The position numbers and the translations under genes were made by a program. Positions 2,630 to 63,959 of a stretch of 64,000 nucleotides of DNA are shown here, one piece after another (position 1 is the stretch's first letter; each line of letters starts with the position of its first letter). This stretch comes from Podarcis gaigeae (taxonomy: Eukaryota). The stretch is from NCBI GenBank assembly GCA_964106915.2, contig OZ066928.1; one strand, written 5' to 3'. The notes beneath the pieces were generated by a model. It saw nothing but the letters and a program-made list of their open reading frames with translations, did not search any database and was not told the DNA's origin.

Positions 2630-3235
2630 AATTTATCATGGACATCCAATGAAGCTGAATGTTGGAAGAAATGACTTCTTGACACAGTGCATAGTTAAAT
2701 TATGGAATTCATGCCCCCCAGGAGGCAGTACAGTGGTACCTCGGGTTACAGACGCTTTAGGTTACGATTTTTCGGGTTGTACACCGCACGAACCCGGAAA
2801 TACCAGAACGGGTTACTTCCGGGTTTTGGCGCTCACACATGCGCAGAAGCACTAAATCATGCTTTGCGCATGCACAGAAGTGCCGAATTATGACCCACGT
2901 GTGCGCACACGCGACACTGTGGGCTGCGAACGCTGGGGGTTGTGAACATCACGTTTGTAACCCGAGGTTCCACTGTAATTGCTACCAACCTGCAAGACTT
3001 TAAAGGAGGATTGGATAAATTCATGGAGGACACTATCATGATAGCTATGTTCTGGCCCAAAGTTAGAGGCAGTAATGCTTCTGAATACCAGTTGCGAGAA
3101 ACCACAGGAAGGGAGTGTGTTTTGGTTCTTGTTTGCTAGTTTCCTACAGACATCTGCTTGGCCACTGTGAGAACAGGATGCTGGACAAGATGGGTTATTA
3201 TACTGATACAGCAGACTCCTCTTATGTTCTTATGA
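2630..3235 (+). mobile_element. CR1 LINE 3' fragment interrupted by a mariner-like MITE
   Basis: Translates GHPMKLNVGR...FLTQCIVKLWNS, then after the MITE ATNLQDFKGGLDKFMED (CR1 RT C-terminus); ends in ttatgttcttatg tail. Confidence 0.8.
2731..2975. mobile_element. Tc1/mariner-type MITE
   Basis: TIRs cagtggtacctcgggttaca / tgtaacccgaggttccactg; TA at 2729-2730 and 2976-2977; removing it restores the CR1. Confidence 0.85.
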
Positions 3236-4519
3236 ATAGGAAAAGGCAGACATTCTGCCTGTCTAGCCGTGGTGTCCCCCCCTGGTCATAATCTGGGTAG
3301 AGAATGGCTCTGTAAATGTTATAGCCCTAATTGGAATGCCTTTTGAAATCTTCTTCTAAAAGCCATTAGCTCTGTTCTTCAGGATATGACCACAGACTGC
3401 TTTGTCTCCTACATTTTTCTGTCTCCTTTTAACAATGCAGCCAACTTCATTAATGCAACGAGGTTAGTGCATGATATTTGAAAACCCTCCTCCTTAATTG
3501 TCATTAATTGCAGAACTTTATATGCAAATACTTCTCCCAGAAGTGTTTGCAATCATTGGTGTCCTATTTAGGAAGTAGGTCAGCGACTCTTATTATGCCG
3601 CAAGAGTTGATTTATTTCCTAGATATTTTCATTTATGAAAAGCGTTTTGGAGAAAAGTGACTTTGATTATTGAAACATGACCTGCAGACAGATCACTTCA
3701 GCACTGTCGTACACTGTCCCTCTTCTGCTTCGAAGAACATCACATTTGCATTCCCCAAATTAATGCTTTTGTCAACCTTAGAACTGCAAATCCCGATGGA
3801 TTTCATTAACAAGTTTCCTAGCCTCGTACGGCTCTGCATCTCAGCAGAGACATAGAAACTGCCACCTGAAAATAAATGCTCACTGAAGAGGGGTGGGGGA
3901 AGCTCTCAAAATATTGATTAAAGGTATGCTGAATGTCTACGGAATATTGACCTAATGTGCAGGGTAAATTGAATATGGAGGCTGTCAGTTTTGTTCGTGT
4001 GGCTGCCCCCTGTGGTGAGCTATTGGAACTGTAGCTCCATGGCAGTGAAATATTCTCAGGCTCTGAACTTGGCCCACTCATTCAGGCTAGCCATTTGAGT
4101 TTTCTATTGGAACTGGGCCTTTGACTTGGTGAGAAAGGTGTTACTGGTTCCACTTCATTTATTGGCTCTGCCTCAGCTCTCGGTTCTGAGCTCCTGGATT
4201 TTTTTTTTTAAAGCCTCAAATTCCTACAGCTCAACATGGATACCATGCCAGCTAAATGGTGCTGGAATGGAAAACTTCACTTTGCCTCCTGAGAGGAAGT
4301 CAGTGGTTCGTCTTTCCAAATCTATTAGAATTATTCAGTTATCCCTGCAAAACCCTACTCCTAGCCACAACCACAGCATATTTTTGAAGCACTATTAAAC
4401 CACCACTAAACAGTCATGACTTCCCCCAAGGAATTATGGGAGATGTAGTTTGTTAAGGGTGCTGAAAGTTCTTAGGAGGAACTTTCCTATTCCATGTAGT
4501 GAACTACCGCTGTGAAGAG

Positions 4520-5759
4520 GAATCCAATATCCCATGTCTGGGCAAGGTACTGGAGTACTTGGTGGCATCTCAGCTCCAGGGGTTCTTGGAGGAGATGGCT
4601 TATCTAGGTCCATTTCAATCTGGTTTCAGGCCTGGTTATGGAACAGAGAAAGCTTTGGTTGTCTTAGTGGATGACTTACACCAGGAACTGGACAGGGGGA
4701 GTGCGTCCCTGCTGATTCTGCTAAACCTCTTGGAGGCTTTCAGTACCATTGATCATGTGGTATCTTTCTGGACCGCCTTGATAGGATGGGACTTGGAGAC
4801 ACTGTTTTACAGTGGCTCTGTTACTTCCTCGAGGGGCAAACCTAGAAGGTGATGCTGGGGAACTCCTGTTCAATGCCATGGTTCTGCTCTGTTCCCCATG
4901 GCATTCAACTTTTACATGAAACAGCTGGGAGAGTTTATCTGGAGTTTTGGGGTCACTGACATGCTGATGACACCCAGCTCTGTTTCTCCTTTCCACCGAA
5001 ATCCAAGGAAGCTGTCTTGGTTTTAAACAGTGGCTTGTCATCAGTAATGGACTGGATGAGGGTGAATAAATTCAAACTTAATCCAGACAAGACATAGGTG
5101 ATCTTAGTCAGAAGACAGAACAGGAAAACAGGGATTCCACAATGTGCTGTATGGGGTAATACTTCCCATAAAGGCATATGGATGTCCAAGTTTCTGCAGT
5201 GGCATTTGCAGAGTTAAAGCTAGTGCGCTAGCTGCAGCCATTCCTTGAGATGCCTGATTTGGCCACAGTGACACCAACTTAGTTATACCCTGTTTGGATT
5301 ACTGTAACATGCTCTATGTGGGGTTGCCTTTGGAATGTGCTCAGAAACTTCAATCGACTCAAAGAGCTGCAGCGAGATTGCTGACTAGGTCTGGTTATAG
5401 GGAGCAGACAACTCCTTTGTTTCAACAGCTCTACTAGTCTTCTCGGTACTGGTCTGTTTCTGGGCACAATTCCAAGTTATCACCTATAAAGCCATACATG
5501 GCTTAGGTCCAAGTTTTCTGAAATACTATATTCCCTCATACAAACCTGCCCAGGTTTTGAGATCTTTGGAGTAGGCTGCTCACAGACAACTCTGGAACTC
5601 CCTCCCTAGAAGCTCCCGAGAAGCTAGACTGGCTCCCATCTTATCCTTCATCCAGCAGATGAAGACTTTCTTTCTTCTTCCAGCAGGCTTTGGGGAACTC
5701 ACTGCTTTTAATGAAAGGGCTTTTAATACCATGCTGTTTTATGGCAATTATTTGTATGG

Positions 5760-5804
<45 letters not shown>

Positions 5805-5865
5805 TATCATTTTGTTCTATCCTGAGACCTGCAGGTATAGAGCAGTTTACAAATTTAATAAATAG
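4520..5865 (+). mobile_element. 5'-truncated L2-clade LINE (decayed RT plus 3' UTR)
   Basis: ORF 4499-4852 SNIPCLGKVLEYLVASQL...FQSGFRPGYGTEKAL...LLILLNLLEAFSTIDH matches L2/CR1-group RT motifs; downstream ADDTQL and KLNPDKT-like remnants. Sits inside an older MITE (4370-4510 and 5870-5920). Confidence 0.85.
5761..5801. repeat. (TA)n microsatellite
   Basis: About 20 perfect TA units. Confidence 0.95.
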
Positions 5866-6919
5866 TAGTAGTTAAACCACTGTGGGAATTGTAGCTTTAA
5901 ATGTATGGTGTAAATGTGACCCTTCTCAGAGTAGACTACTGTAGAAATCAATGGACATGGCTACCTCGGACCCATTAATTTCAATAGGTCTACTCTGGGT
6001 ACAGCTTCATTTCATATAACCCAATATTTTTCAGTTTGGTGAATGAGAAGGGCCTTTGTTTACTTCCTTTTAAAAAAGTCTGCCCAAGGCACAGCAACAC
6101 TCTTCCTAACCAATGCATGGCAATGCATCTCTTCCCCTGCCCCATAACTTGGACTTTCATGGCTCAGGACAGCCGGCCGGGTTTCTAAAGATGAAGATTT
6201 TGTGAGTAATAATAACCACCATGCTTTAATTCTTCCTATGGGGGATCTTAAAATTAAAAGCTGACCAGGCCCAGCAGAGAGACATGTCGAAAACAGTGGC
6301 TACTGTAGAGCCTGAATGCACTGAGACGGTGGGTGGGAATGTTGCAAAAGAAGTTGAGGATAACAAATCTCTGCAAAACATAGAAGAGATGAGGTCCAAT
6401 GTTCAGTCAGTCAATATGCAAGTACAAGAATGGAGATTATGTGTCCCCCTACTTGCCTGTGGGAAACGGAGAGAGCAAGAGAGAAAGGGGGGGGGGTGGC
6501 GGCGGGAGAGAGAGAGAGATGCATGAATGACTGGAAGCAAAGTCTCCTAAGTGACACAGAAGTTGAGTGTATATGGCAAGGCCCTTGTCCAGATGCCAGG
6601 CAGCATCAGGCCACTGGCAGAAGTGGTGTGGCAGGCTGACAGGAGCAGTTCAGATGTAGGCAGGTTCTTCCAGGGGAAAGCCCGGAGGGGGCATTGGCTT
6701 TGTCAGCTGTGTCCATGAACTCTTGTAATAGAACAGCCAGCTGGAACTAAGTCTGCCCAGATGATACACGGGGCACAGATAAGCGCTCTCCTGTGCATGG
6801 GTTGGAAGATGACTGTCACCTGTATTCTCTCCTGGATGCAGCCCTTATGTTCCTTCCACACTCTTACTTAGCCTTGCAGGGCTGACACCAGTTTTGGTGA
6901 AAGTAGGACTATAAGCCTT

Positions 6920-7090
6920 GTTTCTTACGTTTCATTCCACCTTTCCTCCAAAGTGTTCAGACCAGCATATATTGGTCTTCCTTATCCTTGTAAAAAACAA
7001 CAACCCTGTGAGGTAACCCAAGGTCACACAGTGGCTTTTCTAGGTGTGTGGGGATTTGAACATGGCTCTATCTAATCTCATTCTGATTCA
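6920..7090 (-). mobile_element. Old MIR/CORE-like tRNA SINE
   Basis: aacaacaaccctgtgaggta...cccaaggtcacacagtggc...gggatttgaac (reverse-complement core and B box). Confidence 0.55.
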
Positions 7091-7449
7091 TTTACTGCTG
7101 CATTGATTTCCAGAAGACCTAAGCATATTACACCAATTCTGACTTCACTACACTGGCTACCTTTTAGTTCGCAGGCTCAATTCAGTTGGTTTTGTCTTAT
7201 ACAGCCATATATGGCTTGAGACCCCAGGACTAGCTCTCTCCACATAAAGCAGCCCAGAACTTGCCATGTCCAGCAGAGATCCTTCTCCATGTCCCTCACC
7301 CAAGGGATGATCAGAAGGTGAGTGTGGCTTGGACAAAACAGCCTTGTGGGTTGAAAATGGTTAAGACCCCTATTCACAGAGCTACAGTTCCCAGAAAGAA
7401 AATCTAAGGAGCATACCCAACAAAAATCCAGACTGGAGTCCCTAAGATG

Positions 7450-7706
7450 GTTGGATGGCACCTTGTACACCTCCTTCTGGCAACTTCTGCAGCCAAGCTG
7501 GTGCCAAATGTTTTGCTCTGCTTTTTCTCTGGACCACATCAGCAAGGCTGAGAGGGGGGTCTTGTCATCTGGACAGCCTAGGACCTCCATTCACAATGCT
7601 CAGGCTTGTGCCCCATGGAGGTCTCTTTGGTTCTGCTAATGCAGTCATTTGACTTCACCCCTGGAGGCACACTCCATTGTCTCTCAAATCAGAAGGATGT
7701 CCACAA
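7450..7706 (+). mobile_element. 3' part of a non-autonomous RTE-derived element
   Basis: Reverse-complement homolog of 41955-42255 (cagccaagctggtg...ggaccacatcag...actccattgtctctcaa). Confidence 0.6.
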
Positions 7707-7732
7707 TGAGAATCCCCAGCATGGTTTAACAA

Positions 7733-8566
7733 TATCCGCCCTCCCTTCCCCACAGGTGGGTGGGGTTTGCGGCACCAAGCGAGGCTCACCTGGGCGGGTG
7801 CCACCCACCTGCCTGAGCTGGCCTTTGACTCGGCCCCGGCCAGGGAGGACAATGGACAGCCGGCCGGGGGTGGGCCTAAGGCCAAAGGAAAAGAGGCTGA
7901 CTCTTGGGCTCAAGCCTCTTTTGCTGCTCTTCCTTCTGGGATCACCCACCCACCCTCCCTCAATTAATATTTCTTGCCTTTTAATTTCAGCTTAGGTCAG
8001 CGATCTTCAATTTAACAATTTCTTCTTTACAGGCTAATATTTTGCCTTCCAGGTCAGCGGGCGCTGCTGCGGTCGTAAGATGGTTGCTGTATTCGGAACA
8101 GGGAAGGAATTTTCCCTGCATTGCCAGGTTTCGCCTTCCCCGTAGCAATTTCGTCACAACTTTGGCAGTTTTAGGCCTTGGCAAAGTAGCCTTTAGTCTA
8201 ACATCAAGTTGGGGGGGATGCATTGATGCATTCATGCTCCCTCCCCATGTGGCGGCGCTTGCAGGGCCCATTAAAGGGCAAAAACCAGGAGTCCCTGGCC
8301 CTAGAGCGGCGGCATGTAGGTCAAACTCCCCGGATGAGGTCAGTGTAAGTTTGCGCTTTGCAGTCCCCTCTCACTTGGCCTCAACTGCCTGCATATCCTC
8401 AGCCAGGCGGGCTGAGAGGGTTACCTGCCAAGCCCTGTGCCAAGTTTCCCACTTCTAATATTCAATAAAGTTGTGGCCAATTTGAACCCATACTCTGGTC
8501 TCTTGTGTCATCATTTGGGAAAAGGGGGTAGGCACCACAGACAGGGTTTACCGCATGTGCCCGCAA
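7733..8566 (+). mobile_element. Solo repeat of a putative tyrosine-recombinase (Ngaro/DIRS-type) retroelement, copy A
   Basis: GC-rich 834 bp; AATAAAGTTGTGGCC at 8464-8478; ends CGCAA; flanked only by shared CAA(T); removing it restores the host MITE (ggtttaacaa|tcaatcccttttcccagggaactc). Superfamily assignment is inference. Confidence 0.6.
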
Positions 8567-8640
8567 TCAATCCCTTTTCCCAGGGAACTCTTGTGTATTG
8601 AAGTTCTGTGAGGGGAATTTCACACCACTTAACTGTGATA

Positions 8641-8828
8641 GAGAATGGCTAGAGCTCAGTGGTAAAGCCTCTACATTGCAGGCAGAAGGTCCCAGGTTCA
8701 ATCTGCCACATCTCCAGGTAGGGCTGGGAATGTTTGTTTCCGAAAAACCCTGGAGGGCCACTGCCAGCAGGCAGTACAAAAGTAGATGAACCAATGGTCT
8801 GACTCAATATAAGCCAGCTTCCTATGTT
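8641..8828 (+). mobile_element. Squam3-like tRNA-derived SINE
   Basis: A box agctcagtggta, B box ggttcaatc, body ctccaggtagggctggg...ccactgccag, tail cttcctatgttc. Confidence 0.75.
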
Positions 8829-10099
8829 CAGTTGTCCAGTTCAGCAATGTCTGGGAGAGCAAAATGGACCTGTTCACTGTTTTTTGTGAAGCAACAACAA
8901 AGGAAATAAAAACCTTCCTTTTGCCCAAAGCCTAAGTGGTCATGAACGCCTTGGAGCAAGAGTCATTTGGCTTTTAGGAATTTGTACAAGAAACAGGGAG
9001 CTTTTGTACCGAAGCAACCACATTACTGATGATTCCAACCACCCTTTGGGAGATGCAATGGTGTTGGTCGCAAGAAAGCTATGACAAGGTAGATGCACAT
9101 CCTGCATGACCAAAGATTAACATGTACCCTTCTCCTTTCGGGCATATTGATTTTGCTCTCGTATATCATTCATTGCAATCACTTTGCTGCAAGTGGGCAA
9201 TAAAATTAGACAAGTGGGAAGGGGGACTGCCAGTTATAGATGGCTGGAGAGGCCTTTATGATAAACGCCCCAAATTTGGCACTTGGGGAGTAGGACAGCA
9301 AGGTCATCTCCTGACCTGGGAGTGTTTAAAAAACCACTCATAGATTGAATACACCCTGCCCCCTGGAAAATGTTTGGGTTTATGTCATATAAACCTTTTT
9401 CATTAACTGCAGAAAGCTGAATCTTGTCTACCAACTATTTCAATCAGGAAGTGGTGTGCTGTGAATTGCGATTTATTAAGCCCCAAGGGGTGGAAGGACA
9501 AAGTAATGTTCTCCTTTTGTAACACAGCACAGCCGATGAATAATTATTCCATAATCTGAACTACCTGGATTACTCTGGGCATCATTAGGCTCTAGTTGAG
9601 TACACCAACACAAGGTTAGCATGGCTTGCCATGGCTTTGTTGTCCTTCACACCTCCACATTATCAAACCTCCCTCCCCCATAAATACATTCTAATCTTCC
9701 ACACCAAATGTTTGTAACGCTTAATGAAAAGAATAAAATATCGTTTAAGAAATGTTAGAGTTACTCCTAAGTCAATTCTGCAGCTGGCCAACTTCCAAGA
9801 GCCTTTGCTTTTGGTGTGGAAAAATGCCAACTCACTTTGACAAATGTTAAGCAACCACTGTCTGGAATGTTGAACAATCATTGCAAACTCTTCTGCCATC
9901 AATATACTGACCAGCTTCTTTTCGAGGATGGCCCACCAATAAAAATCTTTCTGTGCATCTCCCCATAGCTTGCAAAAGTTTTGCTGTAAGAGGTGTGAAA
10001 GTTCTCAGGTACATTTTTGCTAACCTTTTTATCGAATAGACATTTCCCAACTTTCTTTGCAGATTAAATTTGGAGACAGCTTAGATATATAGGGTAGGA

Positions 10100-10241
10100 C
10101 AGTGCTTTTATTCTAGAAAAAAAATGGGTACTGGTACTCACCATGAAGTTGTTACAGTAAATGCCACACCAGTGCTTTTCTTCTAGAAAAAGGGTGCCAG
10201 AGCTGCATACTCTTAAGTACTCCCCCCCAAAAAAAGCACTG
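10100..10241. mobile_element. hAT MITE
   Basis: TIRs cagtgcttttt / aaaaagcactg; perfect 8-bp TSD gggtagga (10092-10099, 10242-10249). Confidence 0.85.
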
Positions 10242-10390
10242 GGGTAGGACTGCAGCTCAGAAGACCTGCTTTGCATCCCAGGTTGAATCCCCACATCTGC
10301 GGGTGGGGCTGGGAAAGGCTAGAGACCTACTGCCAGTCAGTGCAGATAATATGGATCTAGATAGCCCAATAATCTGACTTTATGTTTCCT
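10242..10390 (+). mobile_element. Decayed Squam3-like SINE
   Basis: cagctcag...caggttgaatccc...gggctgggaaag...ctgccagtcagtgcagataat; similar to 8641 and 18568. Confidence 0.55.
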
Positions 10391-11464
10391 GTATAAAACC
10401 CATTAGAAACATGTTTAATACTCTTAGTTCCTGTGCATATTTTGTTTAAAGACATTCCTTCAAAAGTGCATCCAAAAGATTCATTTTAGGCACAATTTGA
10501 TAGTAACTCTACTTTTCCAGTGAAAAAAAAACTGGGCATAGTCACTCTGTCTCTGTAAACCTATGCTGGATGTTAATGGCCTTTAGGCTGGCATTAAACC
10601 CTTGTTGGTATTCTTTGCACACTTGATTTGGCTGCTTCCGCATGAATGCCCAAAAATTGAAAGTTGGTGTCCTGGAACTTTGGAGACTTCAGACTTCTTG
10701 CACGCTATGGTCTCTCCACAAATCTATCGCCTGATGAATAATACTCTTAAGCTGGAAATAATAGTTTCAAAACATGATTGATTTTACAATGGATTTCTGA
10801 GTGAGTGGAAGATTTACTTGAAAAATGATGGCACCAAATGTTTTCATGAAACATTATTTCGTCTGCCATCATAAGTTAATTAAAGAAATATATATATATA
10901 TTTGCAAGGCTTTAGTGGTGACTTTTTTCCGGCTGAGCCCCCCCCCCCCCTTTATGTGGTCATCACTCACCTGCCCTATTTTTAAACAGAAAAATGGAGC
11001 GGCTTTGTTAGAGCTATTGTGTTGGAGGATGTGCTTGATCCACAGAGAGAGTGACTTTGCGCTCAATGCTTGCACTGGTTGCTTAATCTTCCTTTCATTT
11101 TAAAACAGAGGTGCATGAGGAGATGAATAAAGCTGTCATTGAAGAGTAGGGAACCTGTCAGTAATATTCATACACTTTTCAGCTTGCAAGATGAAGTTCC
11201 TTTAAAGAGCAGCTCAAACTTCCTGCCATCGCCAGAGACACTGAGGATAACTCACGATACAGCCAGGTTGGTTGATATAGAAGCAGATCTTGGGGTAGTT
11301 GTTCCCTTGTTCAAGTGCACTGCTGTCAGCTGATGGGAGATGGAGCTGGGTGTGAAAGAAATATCACCAGGTGTGGTGTTGGCACCCATAATGGCCACTT
11401 ACCATCTTTGAGGGTGAGTGGCAATTGTGTCCTGATGTGGCGCTTCGTTCCCTCTTGGACACAA

Positions 11465-12112
11465 TGCACCATCTTTGTTTGCTGGCCGCCTCCTTTGGCT
11501 GCCATGGAGGCCCATGGGTTCCTGCCAAATGGGCCAATCTTTGGAGGCCCTGGGGTGGGGGGCTTAGCATGGCAAGCAGACCTGGGGGAGGTGGTCTTCC
11601 CTCAGGTCTGCCCACCATCAATTTAACTCAGCCACCCCACCCCCCGAGTGCAGCACCCAGTCACCCAGGGGTGTCACCCACCCTTCCCACCCCTTCATTA
11701 ATAGCTGATTACTGCTCTAACCGTTTCTTTTCAGCTAGCCAGGTTTTGCTGTGGTCTTTTGACGGTTGCCACATTCAGAGCCAGGAAGAAATCTCCCCGG
11801 CTCTGCAGGTTTCTCCTTCCGCATAGCACTAGTCACAACTTTGGAGGTTTAGGCCCTGGGTGGAATCCTATAATCTTCCATCCCATTGGGGTGGCAGTGA
11901 AGTGGTGATTCACCCATCCCCTGTTCTTCACAGTGGTGGTAACAGTACCATTAGAGGGCTTTGGAGGGAAGTCTCTGACCAAAGAGCCTGTTGCGTAGGG
12001 ATAGAGGGCCACAGAGCTTCCCTCAGCGTTTGGGGGCCCATCTGCATAAGCCTGTGTTTTGTGATGGATCCACCCCCAAATAGACCCTGTTGTATCTCAG
12101 ACCCCCTCCAGT

Positions 12113-12153
<41 letters not shown>

Positions 12154-12284
12154 TGCCCAATACTTCCTCCATCTGAAATCAATAAAGTTGTGGCCATTTC
12201 AAATCTCAGACAGTTGTCGTGTCCATTCATTCATCTCTAGCAGTCTGGCACGCTGGGCAGGGGACTCTGCAGCTGGGCACGCAA
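11465..12284 (+). mobile_element. Putative Ngaro/DIRS-type repeat, copy B (left end uncertain)
   Basis: Shares the C-rich box, structured core (11747-11842), AATAAAGTTGTGGCC (12181-12195) and terminal CGCAA with copies A and C. Left end inferred from CAAT at 11462-11465 and from size. Confidence 0.5.
12113..12152. repeat. (TG)n(AG)n compound microsatellite
   Basis: Direct inspection. Confidence 0.9.
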
Positions 12285-14569
12285 TACTTGGGCACTTTCT
12301 GGAGCCAATGCATCCCAGAATGGGTATCAGTCCTCCCAACATTCCCGCCTCCCGCCTCCCATGGCACTGCTAGTGCTGCTGCATCTGCCAGACCTGCCTA
12401 TCACCCTCCAGTGAGTTTATGGGATGAGGCTGATATTCCTTGAAAGAGAGCCAATCTTGCAACAATTGAACCTTAAAGCATTCACAAGCTGCATAAGCTG
12501 ATCAGGTTTTGTGCGACTGCTAGCAATATTTAGCAGTATAGATTTTTGCAGCAGGGGAAAAAAAAAGAACCTAATGCCTTATTTTTGAATCAGGCCATTA
12601 TAATATGCTACTTTGCTCATTGTGAGATCTGTTATGCTGCTGAAATATGCAAGCCTATTTATATAGCTCTCTTCCCTACTGCCTGACCTGATTGTTTGTG
12701 TGGTGCTAAATGGTACTATGAGATGTACAAAGAAAACGGAGGTCATTCTGAACTGCACAAGTTTTATTTAGTCTTATCTCTCATCCTCAATTCCTCATAC
12801 ATTAACACCAAGTTTTAATTTGTTTGTCATACAGAAGATGAAGCAATGCTGACACCTTTTCCTTGGAGGTCAAGCTCCAAGACTTATAGCAAATTATACA
12901 GAAAAGTGAAGTATACAAACTATACAGGCATGTGACACTTGTCAGCATAAACCAAGACAATAAACAAATCAATTGACATCACTTGTAGGGTTACAATAAG
13001 TTTTGTAAGGAGAACTATATGAATTATTGCAAAAGAGGACTAAGAAGGAGTTTATGTAGGATTTGGATTTTACAGCAATAACTATTAAAATAAAATGCAA
13101 AATTAGAAAGGAAGATAGAAAACCATCAGTCGAGGTTGATGGAAATCCTAGGCTGTGATAGCCAAAGGTCTGTTATGTTGTTTAAAATGGGATGTTATGC
13201 TTGAAAAACATGCTAAAAAAACAAAAAAAATTATATTAAACAAAAAGCAATGTGGGTTGTTGAATGAGTAAACTTTGAAAGAAGTCAAACAAGAAAGGAT
13301 GAGGGGCAAAATACTAACTCTCTGTTACACCTCCTATCCCACTTTCTTTGGGCTTTTTTCAAGAACACGTGAGTGAGTCATCAGATTCATGACAATCGCA
13401 GTTTATCATATAAATGTAGAGTCTCTTTTCATGGAGATCAAAGAAAGATAAAAGCTGCAAGGCAAGACACAAATTATAATACCCCCGGGGGCATGCAAAT
13501 CAATATTTGATGGTGGGCAATGATTAGCAGCAGCAGTACTGCAAATAGCAATACTGTATACATTATGCAAGCAGCGTTCACAGTGCTATTAGGAGAATCA
13601 GAAACAATGTCAGTATCATCGCAAACTCAAAGCTTGGGCTGAGGTGACATGGGCTTTATGAAATGTGAGCCACAATGGACCAAGTTTGCATAAGTACATG
13701 GGTAAAAAAACAAACAAACAGGTACAGAATAGCAAACCTCATCCCTAGAGCCAAGGATCTGTTCAGTTCTGACTGGTGCAGGGCAGACACCATGTTAGAT
13801 TTTGTATTCACTGCCAGTAGCAACCCCTGTTACAGATGTTCCCAGCATTGCATTATAGGAAACTTAACATTTCACCTGTCCTGCACCAATTGGGCCAAGC
13901 TGTTAAATCAGGAAATGACCTATCAAGACAATGAGAATTTGCTCTAGTTTAGACAATCTACAACTGTGTCAGTTCCTCCATCCTCTCTTCCCAAGCACTC
14001 CATTATGTTTCCCACTCAGTTTTCAGTCTTGCCTCCCCAACCCACTCATGGGCACTAAGCATATTCAGTCTTCAGTAAGCTGTTATGGGGAGTGCTGTAA
14101 ATCATGGGGTTTGTACTTCTACAGACAGTGGGGTTCCCCTGAGTCTGCTGATAACTTTCTCTTGTGCAGTTGCTGCTGTTTTGACTATAGTAGCACACTT
14201 CCCCTGGCTGCGTACACACGTTTTATTCTAGAATCAATAGAAACTAAGTACTTGTTTTTTTCTACATGCTCTTTTCATTTATTTATTTTTTGCTGCTGAA
14301 AAGTGCTTCTTTAGAAATTGGTTTCATTCCCAAAATAAGAACATCTCAGATTGATTCTGCATTAGCTTGCAGTGTGTCCATTTGAAAGCATGAAAGCAGA
14401 TGTAAGCAGTCCTGGCAACGGTTGTATGTGTGCATCCCTATCTGTCCAATGACTTTGTGGATGGGTATATTCCAAGATCACAACCACCACGTCCTTCTTG
14501 TTGGAGAGAGGTTTGGAAGAAAGATCCTTACTCTCTCGCAGCTGAGTTAGCACAATAGCAATCACTTCA

Positions 14570-15050
14570 ACCACATTAAAACTTAGTTAGATTTACCTCT
14601 GCCCTCATCCACCTTTAAACAAACGTGACCCATGGAAATACATAGATTAGAATAAATCACAGACACTTAGCTTTGTAAATAAGTTAAGATTTTACTCAGA
14701 GTTCCAGAAATTACAGCAAATATGTCTCCATCCATTGGTAGCAAAATTGTGATGAAAAAGGGTTCCAAATGACTTAAAAATATAATAACATTATTTCCTA
14801 ACAAAAGAATCACACAATCTTTACATGAGACAAGATTCAGGCTGTAAAAATTTCAATTTAAAGTGTCTTTTCAATCACAGGTAGCATTTCCTGAGCTGGG
14901 AGCCAAAGCCACATGGTTCCTTGTTCCACAAAGCAGCAGAGAGAGAAAGAGAGTGAAGAAGCAAAGGCTGCTGGGAGTCTGTTAAGCTACACCCAGTGGG
15001 AACTTGAACTCAGGGCTCAGGTTAACCCTTTCATGCATGCAAGTGTGAAT
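14570..15050 (-). mobile_element. Possible solo LTR remnant
   Basis: aataaatcacagacac...taagttaagattttactcag...ggttaaccctttc layout resembles the reverse strand of a vertebrate LTR; no TG..CA ends or TSD verified. Confidence 0.3.
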
Positions 15051-15087
15051 TAGGAACTGTATATTATAGCACTTGCTTCATCTAGGG

Positions 15088-15223
15088 TAGGGTTTCACAA
15101 AATTGGGTCTCCAGTTGTTTTTGGACTACAACTCCCATCATCCCTAGATAGCAGGGATAGTGGTCAGGGGTGATGGAAATTGTAGTCCAACAACAGCTGG
15201 AGACCCAAGTTTGGGAAACCCTA
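15088..15223. mobile_element. Palindromic hAT MITE
   Basis: Long imperfect inverted repeat tagggtttc...ttgggtctccag / ctggagacccaa...gaaacccta; perfect 8-bp TSD atctaggg (15080-15087, 15224-15231). Confidence 0.85.
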
Positions 15224-15341
15224 ATCTAGGGTATGTGCAGGGAGGAATAGTTGTGGATAATATAATCAATGGGAAGGTTTTAAAATGCTTAACAAATAAC
15301 CACACCCACTCTTGGGGATGGCAGTATCTAGATTCAATCTT

Positions 15342-15510
15342 CCATATTTTTTGCTCTATAACACGCACCCGACCATAACACGCACGTAGTTTTTAGAGGA
15401 GGAAAATCTGTAGGCATGCCACCCGTAGGCATTCCCTCCATAAAACGCACAAACATTTCACCTTACTTTCTAGGAGGAAAAAAGTGAGTGTTATGGTGCA
15501 AAAAATACGG
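15342..15510. mobile_element. Tc1/mariner (pogo-like) MITE
   Basis: TIRs ccatattttttgc / gcaaaaaatacgg followed by TA; near-identical to 24494-24662. Confidence 0.8.
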
Positions 15511-17141
15511 TATATTGCAAACAACATGTTGAGGATGAGCATGAATGATTCCAGACTGAGAAAAACTACATTTTTGTTCTACAGGTGGCTTGGTGTATAC
15601 CCAGCTCCCAAAGATAGGAAATAGAATATAAGATATGATTATCAGGATGTAAATATTTTCTTAACACTTTTTAATCTTTTCTCTCTTTCTAGCCAGTAAT
15701 GGTGTGCAGTGACGAACATTCTTTAATAAGTTGAACACAAAGTTTTCCGACAGTTTTGCTGGGTGGAAATTTAGAATTGTATCTTGAGGCCCGTTTTCAT
15801 TTTCAAAAGCGATGTGTGTTAACTCTCCCCACTGCACCCGACTGACAGCTCCTTTCACCGTAAGGCAAATGAAGATTATTGTTTCCAAATATGGGTGGAG
15901 ATGCTCCTTAAGGAGTTTCACTTTTGCGTCTGTCCGGAGGCTTAAGAGAGTTTTTCAGAACAGAAGAGCTTTTAAGCCCATAAGCCTAATTGACATGTTA
16001 TGTAGCTTTAATACGTTTGAATGTTGGGAGCGTGTAACTAAATTTGGAATATACTTTGACTGCTAATCAGCATCAAGAAAAGGTTATCCAGTCATGCTCT
16101 GGGTAAAGTTCAAGGCTGCAAGGACTTTTAGTTACTCGGGTCCATTCAGCAGAACCATATGGATCAGAGTCTTAACTTGTCATTAACATGTTTACATCAA
16201 TGGTTGTATACATAGTTTGTATACCCTTGGGCTATCAGCATGATTCCTCACGACATGTCATTAATTTGCTGTCTAATTTAGAGACCTCTGACTTCAGACC
16301 TGGAAGGCTTTCACAATTATCTAAGCTTCATTAAAACTGCCATAAAAAGGCCCATTGTCCATCTGACACCTTCCACTCTTTCTATTGTTGCACGCCACTC
16401 CAGTCTCTGAATGGTGTGAGATTCCAGGGGTTACCCAGGGTTTGCGTTTCCTTTGGAAATGAGGCACAGCAGAGACTGTGGTATCTTTATGATATATATA
16501 GTTTATTTACACATACATACAACCCAGGCTATGATGGAAGGGTTCAAAGCATTAATGTGCCAAAAGGTTCTTACTTCTCCCATAGCTGTAGCCTTGGGTC
16601 CAAGCAGACTCCAGCCATACCTCCGTCACTCTGCAGCTTGCTTTGTTTAACAGACTTGCTTTGTTTAACTATTTTCCTCTAGCCCTCATCATCTACAACT
16701 GCAATTCTAAACTTTACACTTTGTTTTTGTCTCTGCTAACTATCTCAAGACTCAAGGTTGGGGCTCCATCCATTTACCAGCTGGCACAGATTCTTTGCTT
16801 TGCTGATAGCCCATCTCCCTGTCTTTGTTCTCTGTTAATGGCCCGTCTCTCAAGTGATCTGCTGATTGTGAGAAACTGGCTTGGCCTGTATTTTAACACT
16901 TTGACAAATCCAGTGTCTGGCAGACAATTTTAACACTTCAAGCATTGATTAAATTCTAACACCCATCAGACCCAGAAATTTAGGGGAACCTGTCACTGAC
17001 AAACCCTGTCACCCACAACTTATAACAATGTTTGTGTGTGCGTGTGCAGGTCTACACACGCAAAGCTAATTCATGCAAAAAAGGCTTGGGCTGGCCTTGG
17101 CTGCAAAATATGACCATAGGAAGCACAATTTAATTTTCCAG

Positions 17142-17487
17142 TATAATGGTGGCTAAGAGACTGATGCTGATGAATTGGAAGAATAGAAATATGATTCCCC
17201 TTAATCAATGGCTTGACAGCATGACAATATTAGCAACATACGAATGGATCATGTATAGATGCAGACTTTGTTTCGATAATATAATGATATTTGGAATGAC
17301 CTTATAAAGAATACATGAGGTTATTGATTAAAAAAAATGCATTTGGATAATAAGACGATACACATTTGTATAATAATGTCTGGAAGTGTAACTGAGTATT
17401 TTTCTTTTTCTTTTCATTCATGTCCCCCCCCCCTTTCACCACTTTTTAATAAATGAAATTCTTCTAATAAAATATCTATTAAAAAAA
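17142..17487 (+). mobile_element. 5'-truncated L1 (ORF2 C-terminus, 3' UTR, A tail)
   Basis: From 17146: MVAKRLMLMNWKNRNMIPLNQWLDSMTILATYE, the AK...WK...P...W...E pattern of L1/Tx1 ORF2 ends; AATAAA and A run; imperfect TSD ttaattttc(c/t)ag at 17130-17141 and 17488-17499. Confidence 0.7.
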
Positions 17488-17750
17488 TTAATTTTCTAGG
17501 ATGTACGTGAGAGAGACAGCAATGTGTTCATAAACTCATTATTGTGAGTATCTAACATGAATAATGACAGGACACTACCGATGAACATGTGTCTGTTCAA
17601 AGAAGGAGATAATATTGAGTAGAACAACAATACGTCCAGACATTACCAGAATTACTGGAATTGATGTCCGGGGGGAAGCTCAACAATTTTTGGGGTTTCC
17701 TAAAAAAAGCTGTTCTGGTTTTTACTTTTTGAAATATAGCAACCCTAATG

Positions 17751-17796
17751 TGGTCACGAAGAGTCAGACACGACTAAACGACTAAACGACAACAAT
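17751..17796 (+). mobile_element. BovB 3' terminal fragment
   Basis: ggtcacgaagagtcagacacgactaaacgactaaacgacaacaa, the BovB 3' stem-loop and tail. Confidence 0.7.
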
Positions 17797-18567
17797 GTTG
17801 AGTGGCTTACATACACATTACAGATGGGGAAGTTGGGTAGGGATACGTTTCCTTGGAAACAGTATCTCATAGGAATATGGGAAGTAGCCTCATTATACTG
17901 AGGTGAAATCTACACACGTTAAAAAAAAAGCGCTGTGAAAATGCTTAAACTTTTTAAAATAATATATTGAATTTGCCATTAGCTCACCATTGCCATCTAG
18001 TGCCACATTTATATAATGCACTTAAAATGTTTTATTTGCAGCTGTCTAGCTGAGTCTTGATTCAGACCACTGAGCCATCTAGCTTCTAAAGTATGCTGTG
18101 CAATAGGGAACAAAAGCCATGTGAGCGTCCCACTTCCCCCATGCTCAAGCATACCTGGCTTTGTTTTCTGCTGGTTTCACTCAGCGATCCAAGAATACCA
18201 TTCAGAAGGTTGTTCCACCTGGTCAACAAGACCTTTTAAAAACAGCTTTGCTTTGCTTTGGAGAATAAGACTTTAAACCTCTTTGAGGCTGAGGTTTTTG
18301 CGCTCTCCGTTCTCTATCCACACTGAATGAATTGTAACAATTTAATAAAATATTTACGGTCTATGGTAAATACAGTATATATAATTTATTTTGCATTATA
18401 AAAACTCCTTCAGTCATCTCTAAAAATGCATGAATTGTATAGTTACATAAATATTCCAAATGACAAATGTATAAATATTTCAAAAGTCGATATAAATGTT
18501 TAAAGCAGGGAGGACAGTGGGCCAAGGAGTCCTCATTTCTATCTGCAGAGCTGCCAACAGATATAGA

Positions 18568-18745
18568 GCAGGGCCATAGCTCAGTGGTACAGCATTTGTC
18601 TTGCGTATAGAAGGTCACAGGTTCAATCCTTACCATTTCCAGGTAAGGACGGGAAAGACCCCTGTCTGAAATCCTTGGGAGCCACTGCCAGTCTGTGCAG
18701 ACAGTATTGAGCTAGATGGACTAATGTTGTGACTCAGGATAAGGG
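18568..18745 (+). mobile_element. Squam3-like tRNA SINE
   Basis: gggccatagctcagtggtacagca...aggttcaatcc...gccactgccagtctgtgcagacagtattgagctagatgga. Confidence 0.8.
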
Positions 18746-19157
18746 GTGGTGGTGAGGGGAGATTGGAACTGATTCTAGGAAGATTGGTATAACTATGTTG
18801 GTTTCCAATACTTACACTGAAGAAGATAGTTCAAAAGTGAGGCACTGAGTTGTCTTGCAACTGCATTTTAAGTTGCTGTTTTCTCACATTTATGTAAAAG
18901 TACAATTCTGAGTTTCCTTAGATAGGCGCAGTACTCCCGTGTTAGCACCAGAGTCCAGCAGTGACCAAGACACCAAGACAGTGTCTCACTGACTAAGAAG
19001 CCAAGCTGCATTCCTGGCTCTGAGCTTGGTGGTCAGGGGAACCTCTGAGCCAGATCTCATAGCAGCAGGGCCCATAGCCTTTGGGCTGAGGAACTGAGGG
19101 CCTCTCACAATACCTCACCAGTCTGAGGGCAGAGGGTGCACACTAGGTGGGAATAAT

Positions 19158-19640
19158 AGAATCATAGAATTGTGGAGTTGGCTGGGACCCTGAAGGTCAT
19201 GTAGTCCAATCCCCTGCAATGCTGGAGTCTCAACAAAAGTAACCAAGACAGATGGCCATTCAGCCTCTGCTTTAAAACCTCCAGTGAAGGAGAGTCTACA
19301 ACCTAGACCTTCTACCATCAAACAGCTCTTACTGTTGGAAAGTTCTTCCTGATGTTTAGTTAGAATTCCTTTCTTGTAACTTGGATCCATTGCTTTGGGT
19401 CCTAGCCTCCAGTGCTAGAGAAAACAAGGCTTGGGCCAGCCCTGATTACAAAATATGACCATAAGAAGCAAAATTTAATTTCTTCCATGTGACAACCCCT
19501 TAGATATTTGAAGATGGCTATCATATCTCCTCTCAGTCTCTGCTTTCCCAGACTAAACATACCCAACTTCTTCAACTGTTTCTCACGGGGCTTAGTTTCC
19601 TTTAGCATCTTGAATGCTTTCCTCTGTGCACGTTGCAACA
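19158..19640 (-). mobile_element. CR1 LINE 3' fragment
   Basis: ORF 19402-19641 LQRAQRKAFKM...LGMFSLGKQRLRGDMIAIFKYLRGCHMEE is the CR1 RT C-terminus; tail (attctatg)n on the minus strand at 19158-19170. Confidence 0.85.
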
Positions 19641-21819: not shown

Positions 21820-21940
21820 TAAAAGACATCTGAAGGCAGCCCTGTTTAGAGAAGTTTTTAATATTTAATGCTGTACACGATTGGAAGCCACCCAGAGTGG
21901 CTGGGGAAACTCAGCCAGATGGGTGGGGTATAAATAATAA

Positions 21941-21989: not shown

Positions 21990-21990
<1 letters not shown>

Positions 21991-30114: not shown

Positions 30115-30900
30115 ATTGGGTCCTCCCTTAAAGAGGGCACGTGTTGCGGTGAAACCTGGCAACCAAATCCTGTGTTGTGGGTGGGGATCATTGGTTAGCC
30201 ACAACACCCAATTGGTAGGTCTCTTGATGCTGGGTTTAATCTGGCCAATGGGACACAGTCTAAATGGATTGAGGGATCTATCTATGCCCATGTACGTGAC
30301 CCAGAGCTTCCTCTTTCGGCGCATGCATTCGGAACACCCGCCCACCTCTCCCTACTTTTAGGGCTTGTGCGCTTGACCTTGCTATGCCGTTGTGTGTCAT
30401 CTGTCGTTGGGATAGGAGAACAAGGAATTTCCCCCACTTGCCTGATTGGCTGTTGCCATTTGGGTTTTGCCTGCCACATAGCAAATCGTCACAACTTGTA
30501 AGGTTGCGGATAGGCACTAGTTCAGGTGATAGGGATGGGAGAACGCTTTCACCATCTCTATGTGAAGGGTATTCTGTTAAAGGAATCCAGGGACTCGATG
30601 GTTTGGTTAACCCATGAGAGGGGGTTGTGTCCATGCCTGAGTCCAGGGGGGCATTTGGGCAGCGGGAGATAGTCCGTTCCCGGATTTCTGCTTATCCAGG
30701 TGTTCATCCTAGGCTGACCTATGCTGGTGCCATGGGTCAGCGCTACCTGCAACAGTGCAGGGAGCTAGTCGAACCACAGCCTATGCAACCACTCACTTGC
30801 TGTAATCAATTTGTGGCCTAAATTCTGCCATAAACCAAACCAAAATTTGAGTCTTGTCTGAATTTATTTAAGGGGGAGGTTAAAAGGTCTGAACACGCAA
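30115..30900 (+). mobile_element. Putative Ngaro/DIRS-type repeat, copy C
   Basis: GC-rich 786 bp in AT-rich context; GCAAA at both junctions; structured core 30379-30497; degenerate aatcaatTTGTGGCC at 30804-30818; ends CGCAA. Confidence 0.55.
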
Positions 30901-62475: not shown

Positions 62476-63364
62476 GACAATTAATGTAACATGAAAAGTA
62501 TTTCACACTGTGGGGATTCATGTTCTCTGTTTGGAATGTGCCACTGTCTGTGTTTATAATTCCAACCAGCTGTCCTTGAATTACACATTTCCAATAAAGT
62601 TAAAACAGCTCATTTAAAGAACAGCTTAACACATGCTTCACAGCCAACATAAAACAGATTAAAGAGACAACTGCTGCTTTGCATACCCCTCCCCATGAAG
62701 TAGTTGGTCTTGGAACTTATTCCAATAGCTATTAGATCAATCCGAAATCCATTTGATGATGCATCTTCTATTCCACCCCAATTAGTACAGCACAAATAAT
62801 GGGTTACAACTTGGCATCAGATGCATCAGGCCCTCTTTCCGAAGCAAATACGGCAGCCAGCCAGAGAATGCTTCCTTGAAAACAGGGTTTAGAAACTGCC
62901 ATGCATGTTTAAAAAGATAGTTGTTATCATGTCCAAGGATCTGGACCCCAGCACTTTTACATGAATAGAGGAAGCCTGTACATGAGGAGACCCTCGCCCC
63001 AGAAGGAACCATAACTCAGGGGTGAAGCACACTTTGCATGCAGAATGTTCCAGGTTCAGTCATCAGGTAAAGTGATAAGAAAGCAGTACTGCTCTGCTCT
63101 GTGAGATTTCTCAAAGGTTAGGGGGCAGAATCTCAGGTCCCAGAACTGAATGCGACCCTCCAAGCCTTTCTTGCTTGCTGTTTAGGTTTATGTGTTCAAA
63201 TAGGCCACAATTTTATTGGTTACAGGTGTGAGCAGTTTGGATTAGACATTGGGTGAAGCCAGACTAGATCTCGACTTCCGTCTATCTGCTGGGAATCCAA
63301 CTAAGGGACAGAGGGGGCCCTAAGACTTACATCAAATAGGAGCATCCCGCAGGGTCCTTGTTGG

Positions 63365-63367
<3 letters not shown>

Positions 63368-63407
<40 letters not shown>

Positions 63408-63772
63408 TTTTATTTATACTCCGCCCTCCCCGGCCAGAGCCAGGCTCAGGGCGGCTAACATCAAACAGGAATTACAATAAAATGTAATAGAAAACAACAA
63501 ACAAACAAACAAACAGTTCATTAAAATACAGCTTAAAATGCAGCCTCATTTTAGTGGTAGCCCATAAATCAAGACCATAAAGGGAGGAAACATCAGAAAT
63601 TCACCCAAGCCAGCTATCCACGTTGGTCCTACATGGGCCAGCAAAAAAGCCAAGGGAAAATTTATATACCAAATCCCACATAAGGGGTCAGAGTGAGTCT
63701 AAGCCAAAGGCCAGGCAGAACAGCTCCATCTTGCAGGCCCTATGGAAAGATGTCAAATCCTGCAGGGCCCTA
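63368..63772 (-). mobile_element. L2-type 3' fragment with (TTA)n tail
   Basis: About 13 AAT units, then tttatttatactccgccctccccggccagagccaggctcagggcggct; ...aaaggccaggcagaacagctccatcttgcaggccc at the far end. Confidence 0.7.
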
Positions 63773-63959
63773 ATAATAGTGGCATGGCCCTAGCCCACAG
63801 ACAGGATCCACACCCCTAGATCCCTTTAACAGAATACCCTTAATGAGGAGGGGCAGGTGGAGGCTACAGTCTCACCTCCCAAATGGCTTGCCCACTTCAC
63901 ACTCAAATTGTTTTTGCCTGGCTGGGCTGTGTGTCCTTGAGCTCTGATCATGCTTCTTG

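What the first reader, a model, noticed from the sequence alone, without database searches (positions are those of the whole stretch)
8065..8163. Covarying multi-stem RNA-like element with a fixed 7x5 internal loop shared by three otherwise unalignable retroelement repeats
Seen directly: copies A (8065-8163), B (11747-11842) and C (30379-30497) share one architecture although the rest of their ~0.8 kb barely aligns. Closing stem P1 is TGCTGCG/CGTAGCA (A), TGCTGTG/CATAGCA (B) and TTGCTATG/CATAGCAA (C). P2 is GGGAAGG/CCTTCCC (A), GGAAG/CTTCC (B) and AGG/CCT (C). The internal loop is always 7x5 nt: AATTTTC/TTTCG, AATCTCC/TTTCT and AATTTCC/TTTTG. P3 is CCTG/CAGG (A) versus CCCA/TGGG (C), two compensatory pair changes; B has CCGG/CAGG. 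A and B also have a small hairpin GTC-GTAA-GAT / GTC-TTTT-GAC. Inference: a selected RNA (or ssDNA) structure such as a protein-binding, export, packaging or catalytic element of Ngaro/DIRS-like retroelements. It does not match the hammerhead or HDV consensus by eye. Caveat: the P1 change could be double CpG decay; the P3 changes are better evidence.
Basis: partly seen in the sequence, partly recalled or inferred. Interest (0 to 1): 0.8.

Follow-up and report, generated by a model that had tools for sequence, protein, structure and literature searches.

The report
Conserved core of old lizard repeat
The three look-alike stretches are the best-kept non-coding block of an old, abundant lizard jumping-gene repeat; the proposed three-stem RNA fold is not shown, but the end of the stretch does pair with the repeat's poly(A) signal 300 bases away, which points to a folded RNA end of a known general kind.

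Summary
A and B share a 209-nt block (67% identical; the core 75%). C is detectably homologous only in its 3' half. The units are real interspersed repeats: about 100-500 A-like and 30-40 B-like copies at 80% likeness or more.

The claimed "covarying multi-stem element with a fixed 7x5 loop" does not hold up.
- Only copy A folds that way.
- P2 has no covariation and shrinks from 7 to 5 to 3 bp.
- B's loop is really 8x6.
- All three double changes sit where a CpG pairs with a CpG, so neutral decay to TG or CA yields them.
- The core alone does not beat a column-shuffle null (z -1.4).

What does beat chance is a 12-bp long-range helix. GTCACAACTTTG (8153-8164, the tail of the interval) pairs with TAAAGTTGTGGC, which overlaps AATAAA. 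It is present in all three copies, with non-CpG compensatory changes in its extension.

Best reading: part of a folded plus-strand RNA 3' domain that controls or protects the element's RNA end.

An earlier follow-up in this scan (s1-694969) reported a long-range stem next to the poly(A) signal in what looks like the same repeat family on other DNA. No Rfam family matches. The parent element class could not be tested here.

The parts
7726..8545 (+). Repeat unit A (approximate limits), non-coding
   Evidence: Summed word depth of 3,200-23,000 against about 30-46 for single-copy flanks in two species. The left flank is another repeat whose alignment to the copy at 41954-42246(-) reaches 7706, and by eye to about 7725. 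A tRNA-type SINE starts at about 8640. No Pfam hit in its open frames.
8065..8071 (+). P1 5' arm, copy A (TGCTGCG)
   Evidence: Pairs with 8141-8147, including one G.U, which works only on the plus strand. In the best fold of the 99-nt piece. Pair probability only 0.15 in the 461-nt context.
8141..8147 (+). P1 3' arm, copy A (CGTAGCA)
   Evidence: Lies in the block conserved in all three copies.
8101..8140 (+).
Evidence: It competes with the local palindrome CAGGGAA / TTCCCTG at 8099-8118.
8153..8164 (+). Long-range helix LR1, 5' arm, copy A (GTCACAACTTTG)
   Evidence: 12 pairs with 8466-8477 (10 Watson-Crick and 2 G.U). Pair probability 0.8. RNAalifold z -8 against a shuffled partner block.
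8466..8477 (+). LR1 3' arm, copy A (TAAAGTTGTGGC); overlaps the last 4 nt of AATAAA (8464-8469)
8177..8182 (+). LR2 5' arm, copy A (CTTGGC); pairs with GCCAAG at 8439-8444
   Evidence: In C the same right-hand register (22 nt before LR1) reads AUAGGC/GCCUAU, which gives two transversion double changes.
8020..8053 (+). Two pyrimidine tracts, each ending in AG (8033 and 8053), just 5' of the core
   Evidence: Read directly. The same feature stands before B (11736, 11743) and C (30360). No spliced reads were listed.
11650..12260 (+). Repeat unit B (the part repeated at 80% likeness or more starts near 11650)
   Evidence: Depth rises from about 1-3x to about 30-40x at 11617-11787, and contigs begin at 11651-11678. 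One contig of a second species spans it at about 4% divergence.
11747..11828 (+). Core of copy B: P1 11747-11753 / 11822-11828; preferred inner hairpin 11776-11788 / 11793-11805
11832..11843 (+). LR1 5' arm, copy B; pairs with 12183-12194 (AATAAA at 12181-12186)
   Evidence: the same 12 pairs as in A.
30379..30484 (+). Core of copy C: P1 30379-30386 / 30477-30484 (8 bp)
   Evidence: Only 30463-30501 is significantly homologous to A and B.
30488..30499 (+). LR1 5' arm, copy C; pairs with 30806-30817 (degenerate signal AATCAA at 30804-30809)
   Evidence: 10 of 12 pairs, with one U-A to G-C double change and two mismatches.
63131..63850 (-). Fourth copy D: poly(A) block (AATAAAATTGTGGCC, 63203-63217) and mid-unit block; its core lies at or beyond the window end
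   Evidence: Alignment of its 5' part is ambiguous.

Best explanation
The interval is the best-conserved non-coding block of an old, abundant, roughly 0.8-kb retroelement-derived repeat.

Shown: the block is a real family feature, and its last 12 nt (GTCACAACTTTG) are complementary to TAAAGTTGTGGC, about 300 nt downstream, which overlaps the AATAAA signal. This holds in every copy that has both blocks.

Inferred: in the plus-strand RNA of the element this long-range helix (LR1, extended by LR2) closes a domain of about 300 nt and ties up the last four bases of AAUAAA. The 83-106-nt stretch just upstream is closed by the 7-8-bp P1 stem, 3-5 nt away from LR1. Together they would form the folded 3' end of the element's RNA. 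The most likely job is control of poly(A)-site use or RNA-end stability in an element that carries the same signal in each terminal repeat. A second possibility is a compact 3' structure recognised during copying.

The inner P2 / 7x5 loop / P3 module is one of at least two competing folds and is not established. Its conserved U-rich 'loop' letters may be read as sequence rather than shape.
For: - Family status: summed word depth corresponds to about 100-500 copies for A and 30-40 for B, and the core and poly(A) bins are deeper than their neighbours.
- Only the core and the poly(A) block align between subfamilies.
- LR1 has 12 pairs in A and B and 10 of 12 in C, with one U-A to G-C double change.
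- LR1 was also found as an inverted repeat without prior knowledge.
- LR1 pair probability is 0.8 in a 461-nt fold of A.
- RNAalifold z is -8 against a shuffled partner block. It is -4.0 and -4.2 on the whole conserved blocks (0/150 shuffles).
- The extended duplex is -38.8 kcal/mol in A against -21.3 +/- 4.2 for shuffled partners.
- LR2 in A and C sits in the same right-hand register and shows two transversion double changes.
- The G.U pairs in P1 and LR1 work only on the plus strand, the strand that carries AATAAA.
- The linker between P1 and LR1 varies in length (5, 3 and 4 nt), and the family's frequent indels fall at 8147-8152, as expected of an unpaired joint.
- Not coding: mismatches show no 3-base period, and copy B has stop codons. 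No Pfam hit.
Against: - Only three copies, all decayed fossils.
- Folds of about 500 nt for B and C do not return LR1 or P1. A (GT)n(GA)n insert disturbs B.
- P1 is not significant once the search space is counted, and its pair probability is 0.15-0.2 in long context.
- LR1 is sequence-identical in A and B, so most of its support is complementarity of two conserved blocks. That could also be one DNA motif bound in both orientations.
- RNA reads over the unit are few and come from both strands. Transcript start, end and strand are unknown.
- The local palindrome scores better on the minus strand, which this model does not explain.
Confidence: 0.45

Rival explanations
1. One reading: a plus-strand three-stem RNA (P1, P2, 7x5 internal loop, P3) kept by selection, for example as a protein-binding platform.
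For: The best fold of A is exactly this. RNAalifold on a MAFFT alignment recovers P1, P2 and P3. Arm-restricted shuffles give P1 0/1000 and P2+P3 p 0.004. 82.5% of pair cells are paired, against 30-54% when partners are slid.
Against: The fold lies 15 and 21 kcal/mol above the best fold in B and C. Its P2 and P3 pairs have zero probability in the wider folds of B and C. P2 has no covariation and 5 of 7 pairs are broken in some copy. All three double changes are at CpG:CpG sites. Whole-core z is -1.4. The arms were picked after the fact.
Confidence: 0.12
2. The block is conserved as DNA: a promoter or enhancer module of the terminal repeat. GGAAGGAATTTTCCC / GGAATTTCCCC resembles Rel/NF-kB- and ETS-type sites (from my own knowledge of these consensus sites), and the local imperfect palindromes and inverted motifs reflect proteins that bind as dimers or in both orientations.
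For: The 'loop' letters (AAT.T.CCC, GGTTT) are better conserved than the P2 stem. All three copies have a local palindrome centred within 2 nt of the same place. LR1 is identical in A and B, as a binding motif would be.
Against: The G.U positions in P1 and LR1 and the non-CpG compensatory changes in LR1 and LR2 are not expected of a DNA motif. The palindrome arms differ in length and register (7, 13 and 9 bp). No transcription-factor scan or chromatin data were available.
Confidence: 0.18
3. Shared ancestry plus chance: the block is simply the slowest-decaying piece of related dead repeats, and all stems are found by eye among purine-rich and pyrimidine-rich runs.
For: Whole-core tests are not significant. 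GGGAAGG can pair with either TTCCC or CCTTCCC. The copies are old: at least B predates a species split of about 4% divergence.
Against: Two separate blocks stay alignable while 0.6 kb around them does not. The two best-kept blocks are mutually complementary far beyond the shuffled expectation.
Confidence: 0.13
4. The core is the start of a terminal exon: each copy has a branch-point-like motif, a pyrimidine tract and an AG just 5' of it and a poly(A) signal about 400 nt 3' of it, so the conserved letters serve splicing of a subgenomic RNA.
For: TTTCTTCTTTACAG and TTTTGCCTTCCAG in A, CTAACCGTTTCTTTTCAG in B, and CCCTACTTTTAG in C.
Against: No spliced reads appear in the joints listed for two RNA runs, though depth was only a few reads. 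No coding signal follows the AG. A T-rich tract may be conserved for other reasons.
Confidence: 0.07
5. ENE-like poly(A)-tail clamp: the GC-rich P2, facing U-runs (AAUUUUC / UUUCG) and short GC-rich P3 form a small triple-helix element, brought next to the tail by LR1.
For: The layout resembles ENEs, that is, a stem-loop with a U-rich internal loop next to G-C pairs in a 3' UTR (PMC7583470, PMC12501189). ENEs are known in retroelements, including ones from fish (PMC7583470). LR1 would place the poly(A) site near the core.
Against: Only 3-4 consecutive U per side in A and C, and 1 and 3 in B, against five U-A-U triples in the solved PAN structure (PMC7583470). Spacer letters separate the U-runs from P2. 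The module is not the preferred fold in B or C. No Rfam match.
Confidence: 0.04
6. Self-cleaving ribozyme of a retroelement.
For: None beyond the multi-stem drawing. Penelope-type hammerheads are reported elsewhere in this genome (notes returned).
Against: No Rfam ribozyme family matches at any threshold. I see no conserved catalytic core in the sequences read.
Confidence: 0.01

Closest known systems
Retroviral R-region poly(A) hairpin (for example HIV-1), from my own knowledge
   Same: A helix in a terminal repeat that partly sequesters AAUAAA in an element carrying the same signal at both ends. It stands next to another stem-loop domain.
   Different: Here the partner lies about 300 nt upstream (a long-range helix, not a local hairpin). 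The parent element is unknown. No function was tested.
HTLV-1 Rex-responsive element in the LTR, from my own knowledge
   Same: A large folded domain of about 250-300 nt inside a terminal repeat that changes the spatial relation of the poly(A) signal to other 3'-end elements.
   Different: In HTLV the fold lies between the signal and the cleavage site. Here it lies upstream of the signal and includes part of the signal itself.
ENE triple-helix stability elements of viral, lncRNA and transposon RNAs (PMC7583470, PMC12501189)
   Same: GC-rich stems around an internal loop with U-runs on both sides; 3' UTR-type location in a retroelement.
   Different: The U-runs are too short (3-4, and 1-3 in B). 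Spacer letters separate them from the lower stem. The module is not stably predicted in two of three copies.
3' stem-loops of LINEs and partner SINEs recognised by their reverse transcriptase, from my own knowledge
   Same: Conserved structured RNA near the 3' end of otherwise diverged retroelement families.
   Different: Those lie at the very 3' end, before a repeat tail. Here the unit ends with AATAAA plus about 60-80 nt and has no A-tail or microsatellite tail.
Earlier follow-up in this scan, s1-694969 (same genome, other DNA)
   Same: A 0.8-kb non-coding repeat with a long-range stem just upstream of the poly(A) signal, kept through compensating changes.
   Different: That report concerns other copies. 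It does not deal with the P1-P3 core assessed here. I could not see its sequences, so the match to this repeat family is my inference.

Membership tests
Any Rfam 15 family, including hammerhead, HDV-like, twister and other ribozymes | Covariance-model score at or above the family threshold | tested here: not met
   No hits at gathering score over the whole window. Nothing relevant at E up to 5 around A and B or C.
ENE (poly(A) triple-helix element) | U-rich internal loop able to give about five consecutive U-A-U triples (PAN structure, PMC7583470) | tested here: not met
   Longest facing U-runs are 4 and 3 in A, 1 and 3 in B, and 3 and 4 in C.
ENE (poly(A) triple-helix element) | G-C pairs directly next to the U-rich loop (PMC12501189) | tested here: inconclusive
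   P3 C-G pairs abut the U-runs (with one C between on the 5' side). On the P2 side, AA and CG spacers intervene. In B the closing pair is A.C.
ENE (poly(A) triple-helix element) | Stable stem-loop that holds the loop open, near the poly(A) tail | tested here: inconclusive
   Predicted in A only. It lies about 330 nt from AATAAA in sequence and is near it only if LR1 forms.
Ngaro / DIRS (tyrosine-recombinase) retroelement terminal repeat | Adjacent RT/RNase H and tyrosine-recombinase genes | tested here: not met
   Of the ten long open frames tested, including those in the units, only a weak LINE-type RVT_1 fragment at 4466-4849 matched Pfam. The copies here are solo units, so this does not exclude the origin.
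Ngaro / DIRS (tyrosine-recombinase) retroelement terminal repeat | Split direct repeats (A1..B1-A2-B2), or inverted terminal repeats plus an internal complementary region | tested here: not met
   No consistent direct or terminal inverted repeats inside or around the units.
Solo LTR of an integrase-type LTR retroelement | TG...CA ends flanked by a 4-6-bp target duplication | tested here: inconclusive
   The ends could not be fixed. B may start with TG at 11650. By eye I found no matching flanks for A or C.
Solo LTR of an integrase-type LTR retroelement | Poly(A) signal in the 3' part of the unit | tested here: met
   AATAAA at 8464, 12181 and 63217(-); AATCAA at 30804. About 60-80 nt of shared sequence follows.
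Structured RNA supported by covariation | Compensatory changes above a null that allows for relatedness and CpG decay | tested here: not met
   For P1-P3: three double changes, all at CpG:CpG sites; covariation term +0.34; z -1.4. For LR1/LR2: three non-CpG double changes, but three sequences give no power for a formal test.

The most novel reading that the evidence does not exclude
The P2 / U-rich loop / P3 module is a pared-down ENE-like clamp. LR1 folds the RNA so that the poly(A) tail emerges beside it, and the facing U-runs grip the tail and protect the retroelement RNA from deadenylation. This would be an ENE-type element in a reptile retroelement, with a long-range helix as its delivery device.
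Probability: 0.04. Interest if true: 0.75.

Novelty: new member of a known kind. Interest (0 to 1): 0.35.

Why it matters
If the long-range helix and the adjacent P1 domain are real RNA structure, this abundant lizard repeat family uses a folded 3' domain that covers part of its own poly(A) signal. That is the kind of device retroviruses use to manage identical signals in both terminal repeats, and little is known about such signals in non-retroviral vertebrate retroelements. It would also give a compact marker (two conserved complementary blocks) for finding and classifying diverged members of the family.

The negative result matters as well. 'Compensatory' changes in old vertebrate repeats must be screened for CpG:CpG pairs. 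Two paired CpGs decay to a Watson-Crick-compatible state half of the time, and to a pairable state three times in four.

Tried and rejected
- More copies, protein route: a search with the open frame across copy A, hoping for spurious ORFs from other copies, found nothing.
- More copies, pattern scans: viral contigs gave none. Metagenome contigs gave 52 loci, all chance matches with no similarity to the core or poly(A) profiles. Several came from gut metagenomes. I took none for human and did not pursue them.
- More copies, other lizard DNA: I fetched a Varanus locus through a LINE RT relative. Its 27 kb held no copy, so the route was dropped as too poor in yield.
- More copies, this window: profile and covariance-model searches find only A, B and C, plus D's poly(A) block.
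- Read laying: gave copy number and orthology, but its variant table was cut, so per-position variation in the core was not available. RNA depth was a few reads on both strands.
- Coding exon: rejected.
- tRNA-like or Pol III boxes: considered by eye only and not pursued.
- Split direct repeats: none.
- Copy D as a test of LR1: its 5' part aligns in two incompatible ways, one broken and one compensated, so it was not used.
- Thermodynamic support for LR1 in B and C: not obtained in 500-nt folds.
- I did not build a consensus or mended element.

Full report
**What is there.** The window is lizard DNA with a CpG observed/expected ratio of 0.23. A (8042-8250) and B (11724-11924) align over 209 nt at 67%, with a core of 117 nt at 75%. 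They align again around AATAAAGTTGTGGCC, about 320-340 nt downstream. C shares that second block. Within the core, only 30463-30501 is significantly homologous to an A+B profile (E 2.9e-5); its 5' half is not (E 3). A fourth copy, D, lies on the minus strand at 63131-63850 and runs into the window end before its core. Profile and covariance-model searches find no further copy in the window.

**They are real repeats.** I laid contigs of two lizard species on 7000-12100. Single-copy word depth is about 30-46. Depth is 3,200-23,000 over unit A, which corresponds to roughly 100-500 copies at 80% likeness or more. It is about 30-40x over unit B. The bins holding the core and the poly(A) block are deeper than their neighbours, as expected if related subfamilies share only those blocks. 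One contig of the second species spans B at about 4% divergence, so B at least is an old insertion. A sits between another high-copy repeat (alignment to the copy at 41954-42246(-) reaches 7706) and a tRNA-type SINE (from about 8640). The units are non-coding: Pfam finds nothing in their open frames, A/B mismatches show no 3-base period, and B has stop codons.

RNAfold of A alone returns exactly P1 / small hairpin / P2 / 7x5 loop / P3, but with z only -1.5. B keeps P1 and the small hairpin but prefers a different inner hairpin (CAGAGCC.../...GGCTCTG). C keeps only P1. Their z values are -1.8 and -0.4.

The 'fixed 7x5 loop' simply follows from the lack of indels in an alignable stretch:
- In B the pair that should close P2 is A.C, which makes the loop 8x6, and P3 has a G.A.
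- In C, P2 is 3 bp and is separated from P1 by 4 nt.

**Covariation.** On the MAFFT alignment, RNAalifold recovers P1, P2 and P3, but its covariation term is +0.34. The pair count gives 82.5% of cells paired and three pairs with changes on both sides. P2 has none, and 5 of its 7 pairs are broken in some copy.

All three double changes lie where a CpG in one arm pairs with a CpG in the other:
- P1: C8070-G8142, within GCG / CCG.
- P3: 8117-8126 and 8118-8125. An ancestral CCCG/CGGG explains A (TG/CA), C (CA/TG) and, with a 1-nt realignment, B (CG/CA, a C.A mismatch).

Two paired CpGs that each decay to TG or CA end Watson-Crick-paired in 2 of 4 outcomes and pairable in 3 of 4. These changes therefore carry almost no weight in old, methylated repeats.

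**Chance tests.**
- Column shuffles of the whole core give z -1.4 (p about 0.09) on the plus strand.
- A 7-bp helix conserved in both A and B somewhere in the alignment occurs in 43% of shuffles.
Their arms were chosen after the fact.
- The same kind of test also supports a competing local palindrome on the minus strand (p 0.001 for A+B, 0.02 for A+B+C).

The best argument for P1 is C. Its 5' half is otherwise unalignable, yet it holds an 8-bp perfect complement of the conserved CATAGCAA. P1 also has a G.U in A and B that becomes A-U in C, which works only on the plus strand.

**What beats chance.** The interval's unassigned tail, GTCACAACTTTG (8153-8164), is complementary to TAAAGTTGTGGC (8466-8477), which overlaps the last four bases of AATAAA.
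- The pair turns up as an inverted repeat without prior knowledge.
- It has 12 pairs in A and B, and 10 of 12 in C with one U-A to G-C double change.
- Its pair probability is 0.8 in a 461-nt fold of A.
- RNAalifold gives z -8 against a shuffled partner block. On the full conserved blocks it gives z -4.0 (partner shuffled) and -4.2 (both shuffled), 0/150 in each case.
- The helix continues. The duplex in A is -38.8 kcal/mol against -21.3 +/- 4.2 for shuffled partners. B gives p 0.04 and C p 0.10.
- In the same right-hand register, 22 nt before LR1, A has CUUGGC/GCCAAG and C has AUAGGC/GCCUAU. That is two transversion double changes that are not CpG-related. B keeps 4 pairs with a 1-nt slip.
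- The 3-5-nt linker between P1 and LR1 varies in length among the three copies. It is also where the family's best-supported indels fall (8147-8152).

An earlier follow-up in this scan (s1-694969, other DNA of this genome) reported a long-range stem next to the poly(A) signal in what looks like the same repeat family. I used that as a lead and tested the helix here independently.

**Reading.** Most likely (0.45), the interval belongs to a folded plus-strand RNA 3' domain of the element: a P1-closed hairpin domain next to a long-range helix that covers part of AAUAAA. Such a device would tune poly(A)-site use or RNA-end stability in an element with the same signal in each terminal repeat. Alternatively it would present a compact 3' structure for copying. 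Transcription strand, start and end are inferred, not shown: RNA reads were few and came from both strands.

The rivals are:
- DNA-level promoter or enhancer motifs. The 'loop' letters, which include a Rel/NF-kB-like GGAATTTCC, are better kept than P2.
- Plain ancestry plus chance.
- A splice acceptor. Each copy has a pyrimidine tract plus AG just upstream.
- An ENE-like clamp. The layout resembles ENEs described in PMC7583470 and PMC12501189, but the U-runs are too short.
- A ribozyme. There is no support for this, and Rfam finds nothing.

**Class of the parent element.** This could not be tested here. Only a weak LINE-type RT fragment (4466-4849) matched Pfam among the frames tested, and no tyrosine recombinase was found. 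There are no split direct or terminal inverted repeats, and I could not fix TG...CA ends or a target duplication. Dfam and Repbase were not available.

**Attempts to get more copies.** I tried a protein word search, viral and metagenome pattern scans and a Varanus locus. All failed, so no formal covariation test with adequate power was possible.

Noticed in passing
window 8099-8118, 11776-11805, 30412-30437: Each copy has a local imperfect palindrome centred within 2 nt of the same place (arms of 7, 13 and 9 bp). It competes with P2 and P3, and it scores better on the minus strand because its A.C mismatches become G.U there (AB RNAalifold z -4.2; restricted test p 0.001). The plus-strand RNA model does not explain this.
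   Followed up: partly
window 7753-7925 and 11569-11618: The part of the units upstream of the core is rich in hairpins. A has three in a row (11-bp perfect stem at 7753-7811; 23-nt arms at 7819-7884; 13-nt arms at 7886-7925). B has 21-nt arms at 11569-11618. Sequences differ between copies.
   Followed up: no
window 7342-7725 and 41954-42246 (minus): A very high-copy repeat directly left of unit A. Its summed word depth of about 130,000-350,000 is thousands of times the single-copy level, and RNA reads on both strands cover it.
   Followed up: partly
window 8020-8053, 11720-11743, 30343-30360: A branch-point-like motif, a pyrimidine tract and an AG stand just 5' of the core in all three copies. 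They look like strong splice acceptors. No spliced reads were listed, at very low RNA depth.
   Followed up: partly
window 8270-8300, 11948-11980, 30565-30592, 63814-63841 (minus): A third weakly conserved block in the middle of the units (..ATTAAAGGG.. / GGGTATTCTGTTAAAGG). C and D are 93% identical there over 28 nt.
   Followed up: no
window 12113-12153: A (TG)11(GA)10 microsatellite sits inside unit B, between the core and the poly(A) block. It disturbs long-range fold predictions for B.
   Followed up: no
window 63390-63640 (minus-strand copy D): Copy D carries an inserted stretch with an (ATT)n run and a GC-rich tail-like piece. The window ends in a (GA)n run where D's core should start.
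   Followed up: no
window 4466-4849; locus L053: A LINE-type reverse-transcriptase fragment (weak RVT_1 match), 61-70% identical to Varanus komodoensis entries. One of these (P0003) is named 'Calcium uptake protein 2' but carries only an RVT_1 domain. It lies inside the range of a larger EF-hand gene, so its name is probably an annotation error.
   Followed up: partly
window 27265-27713: Another first-stage note reports a Penelope palindrome with hammerheads here. Rfam at gathering score reported no hammerhead anywhere in the window.
   Followed up: no
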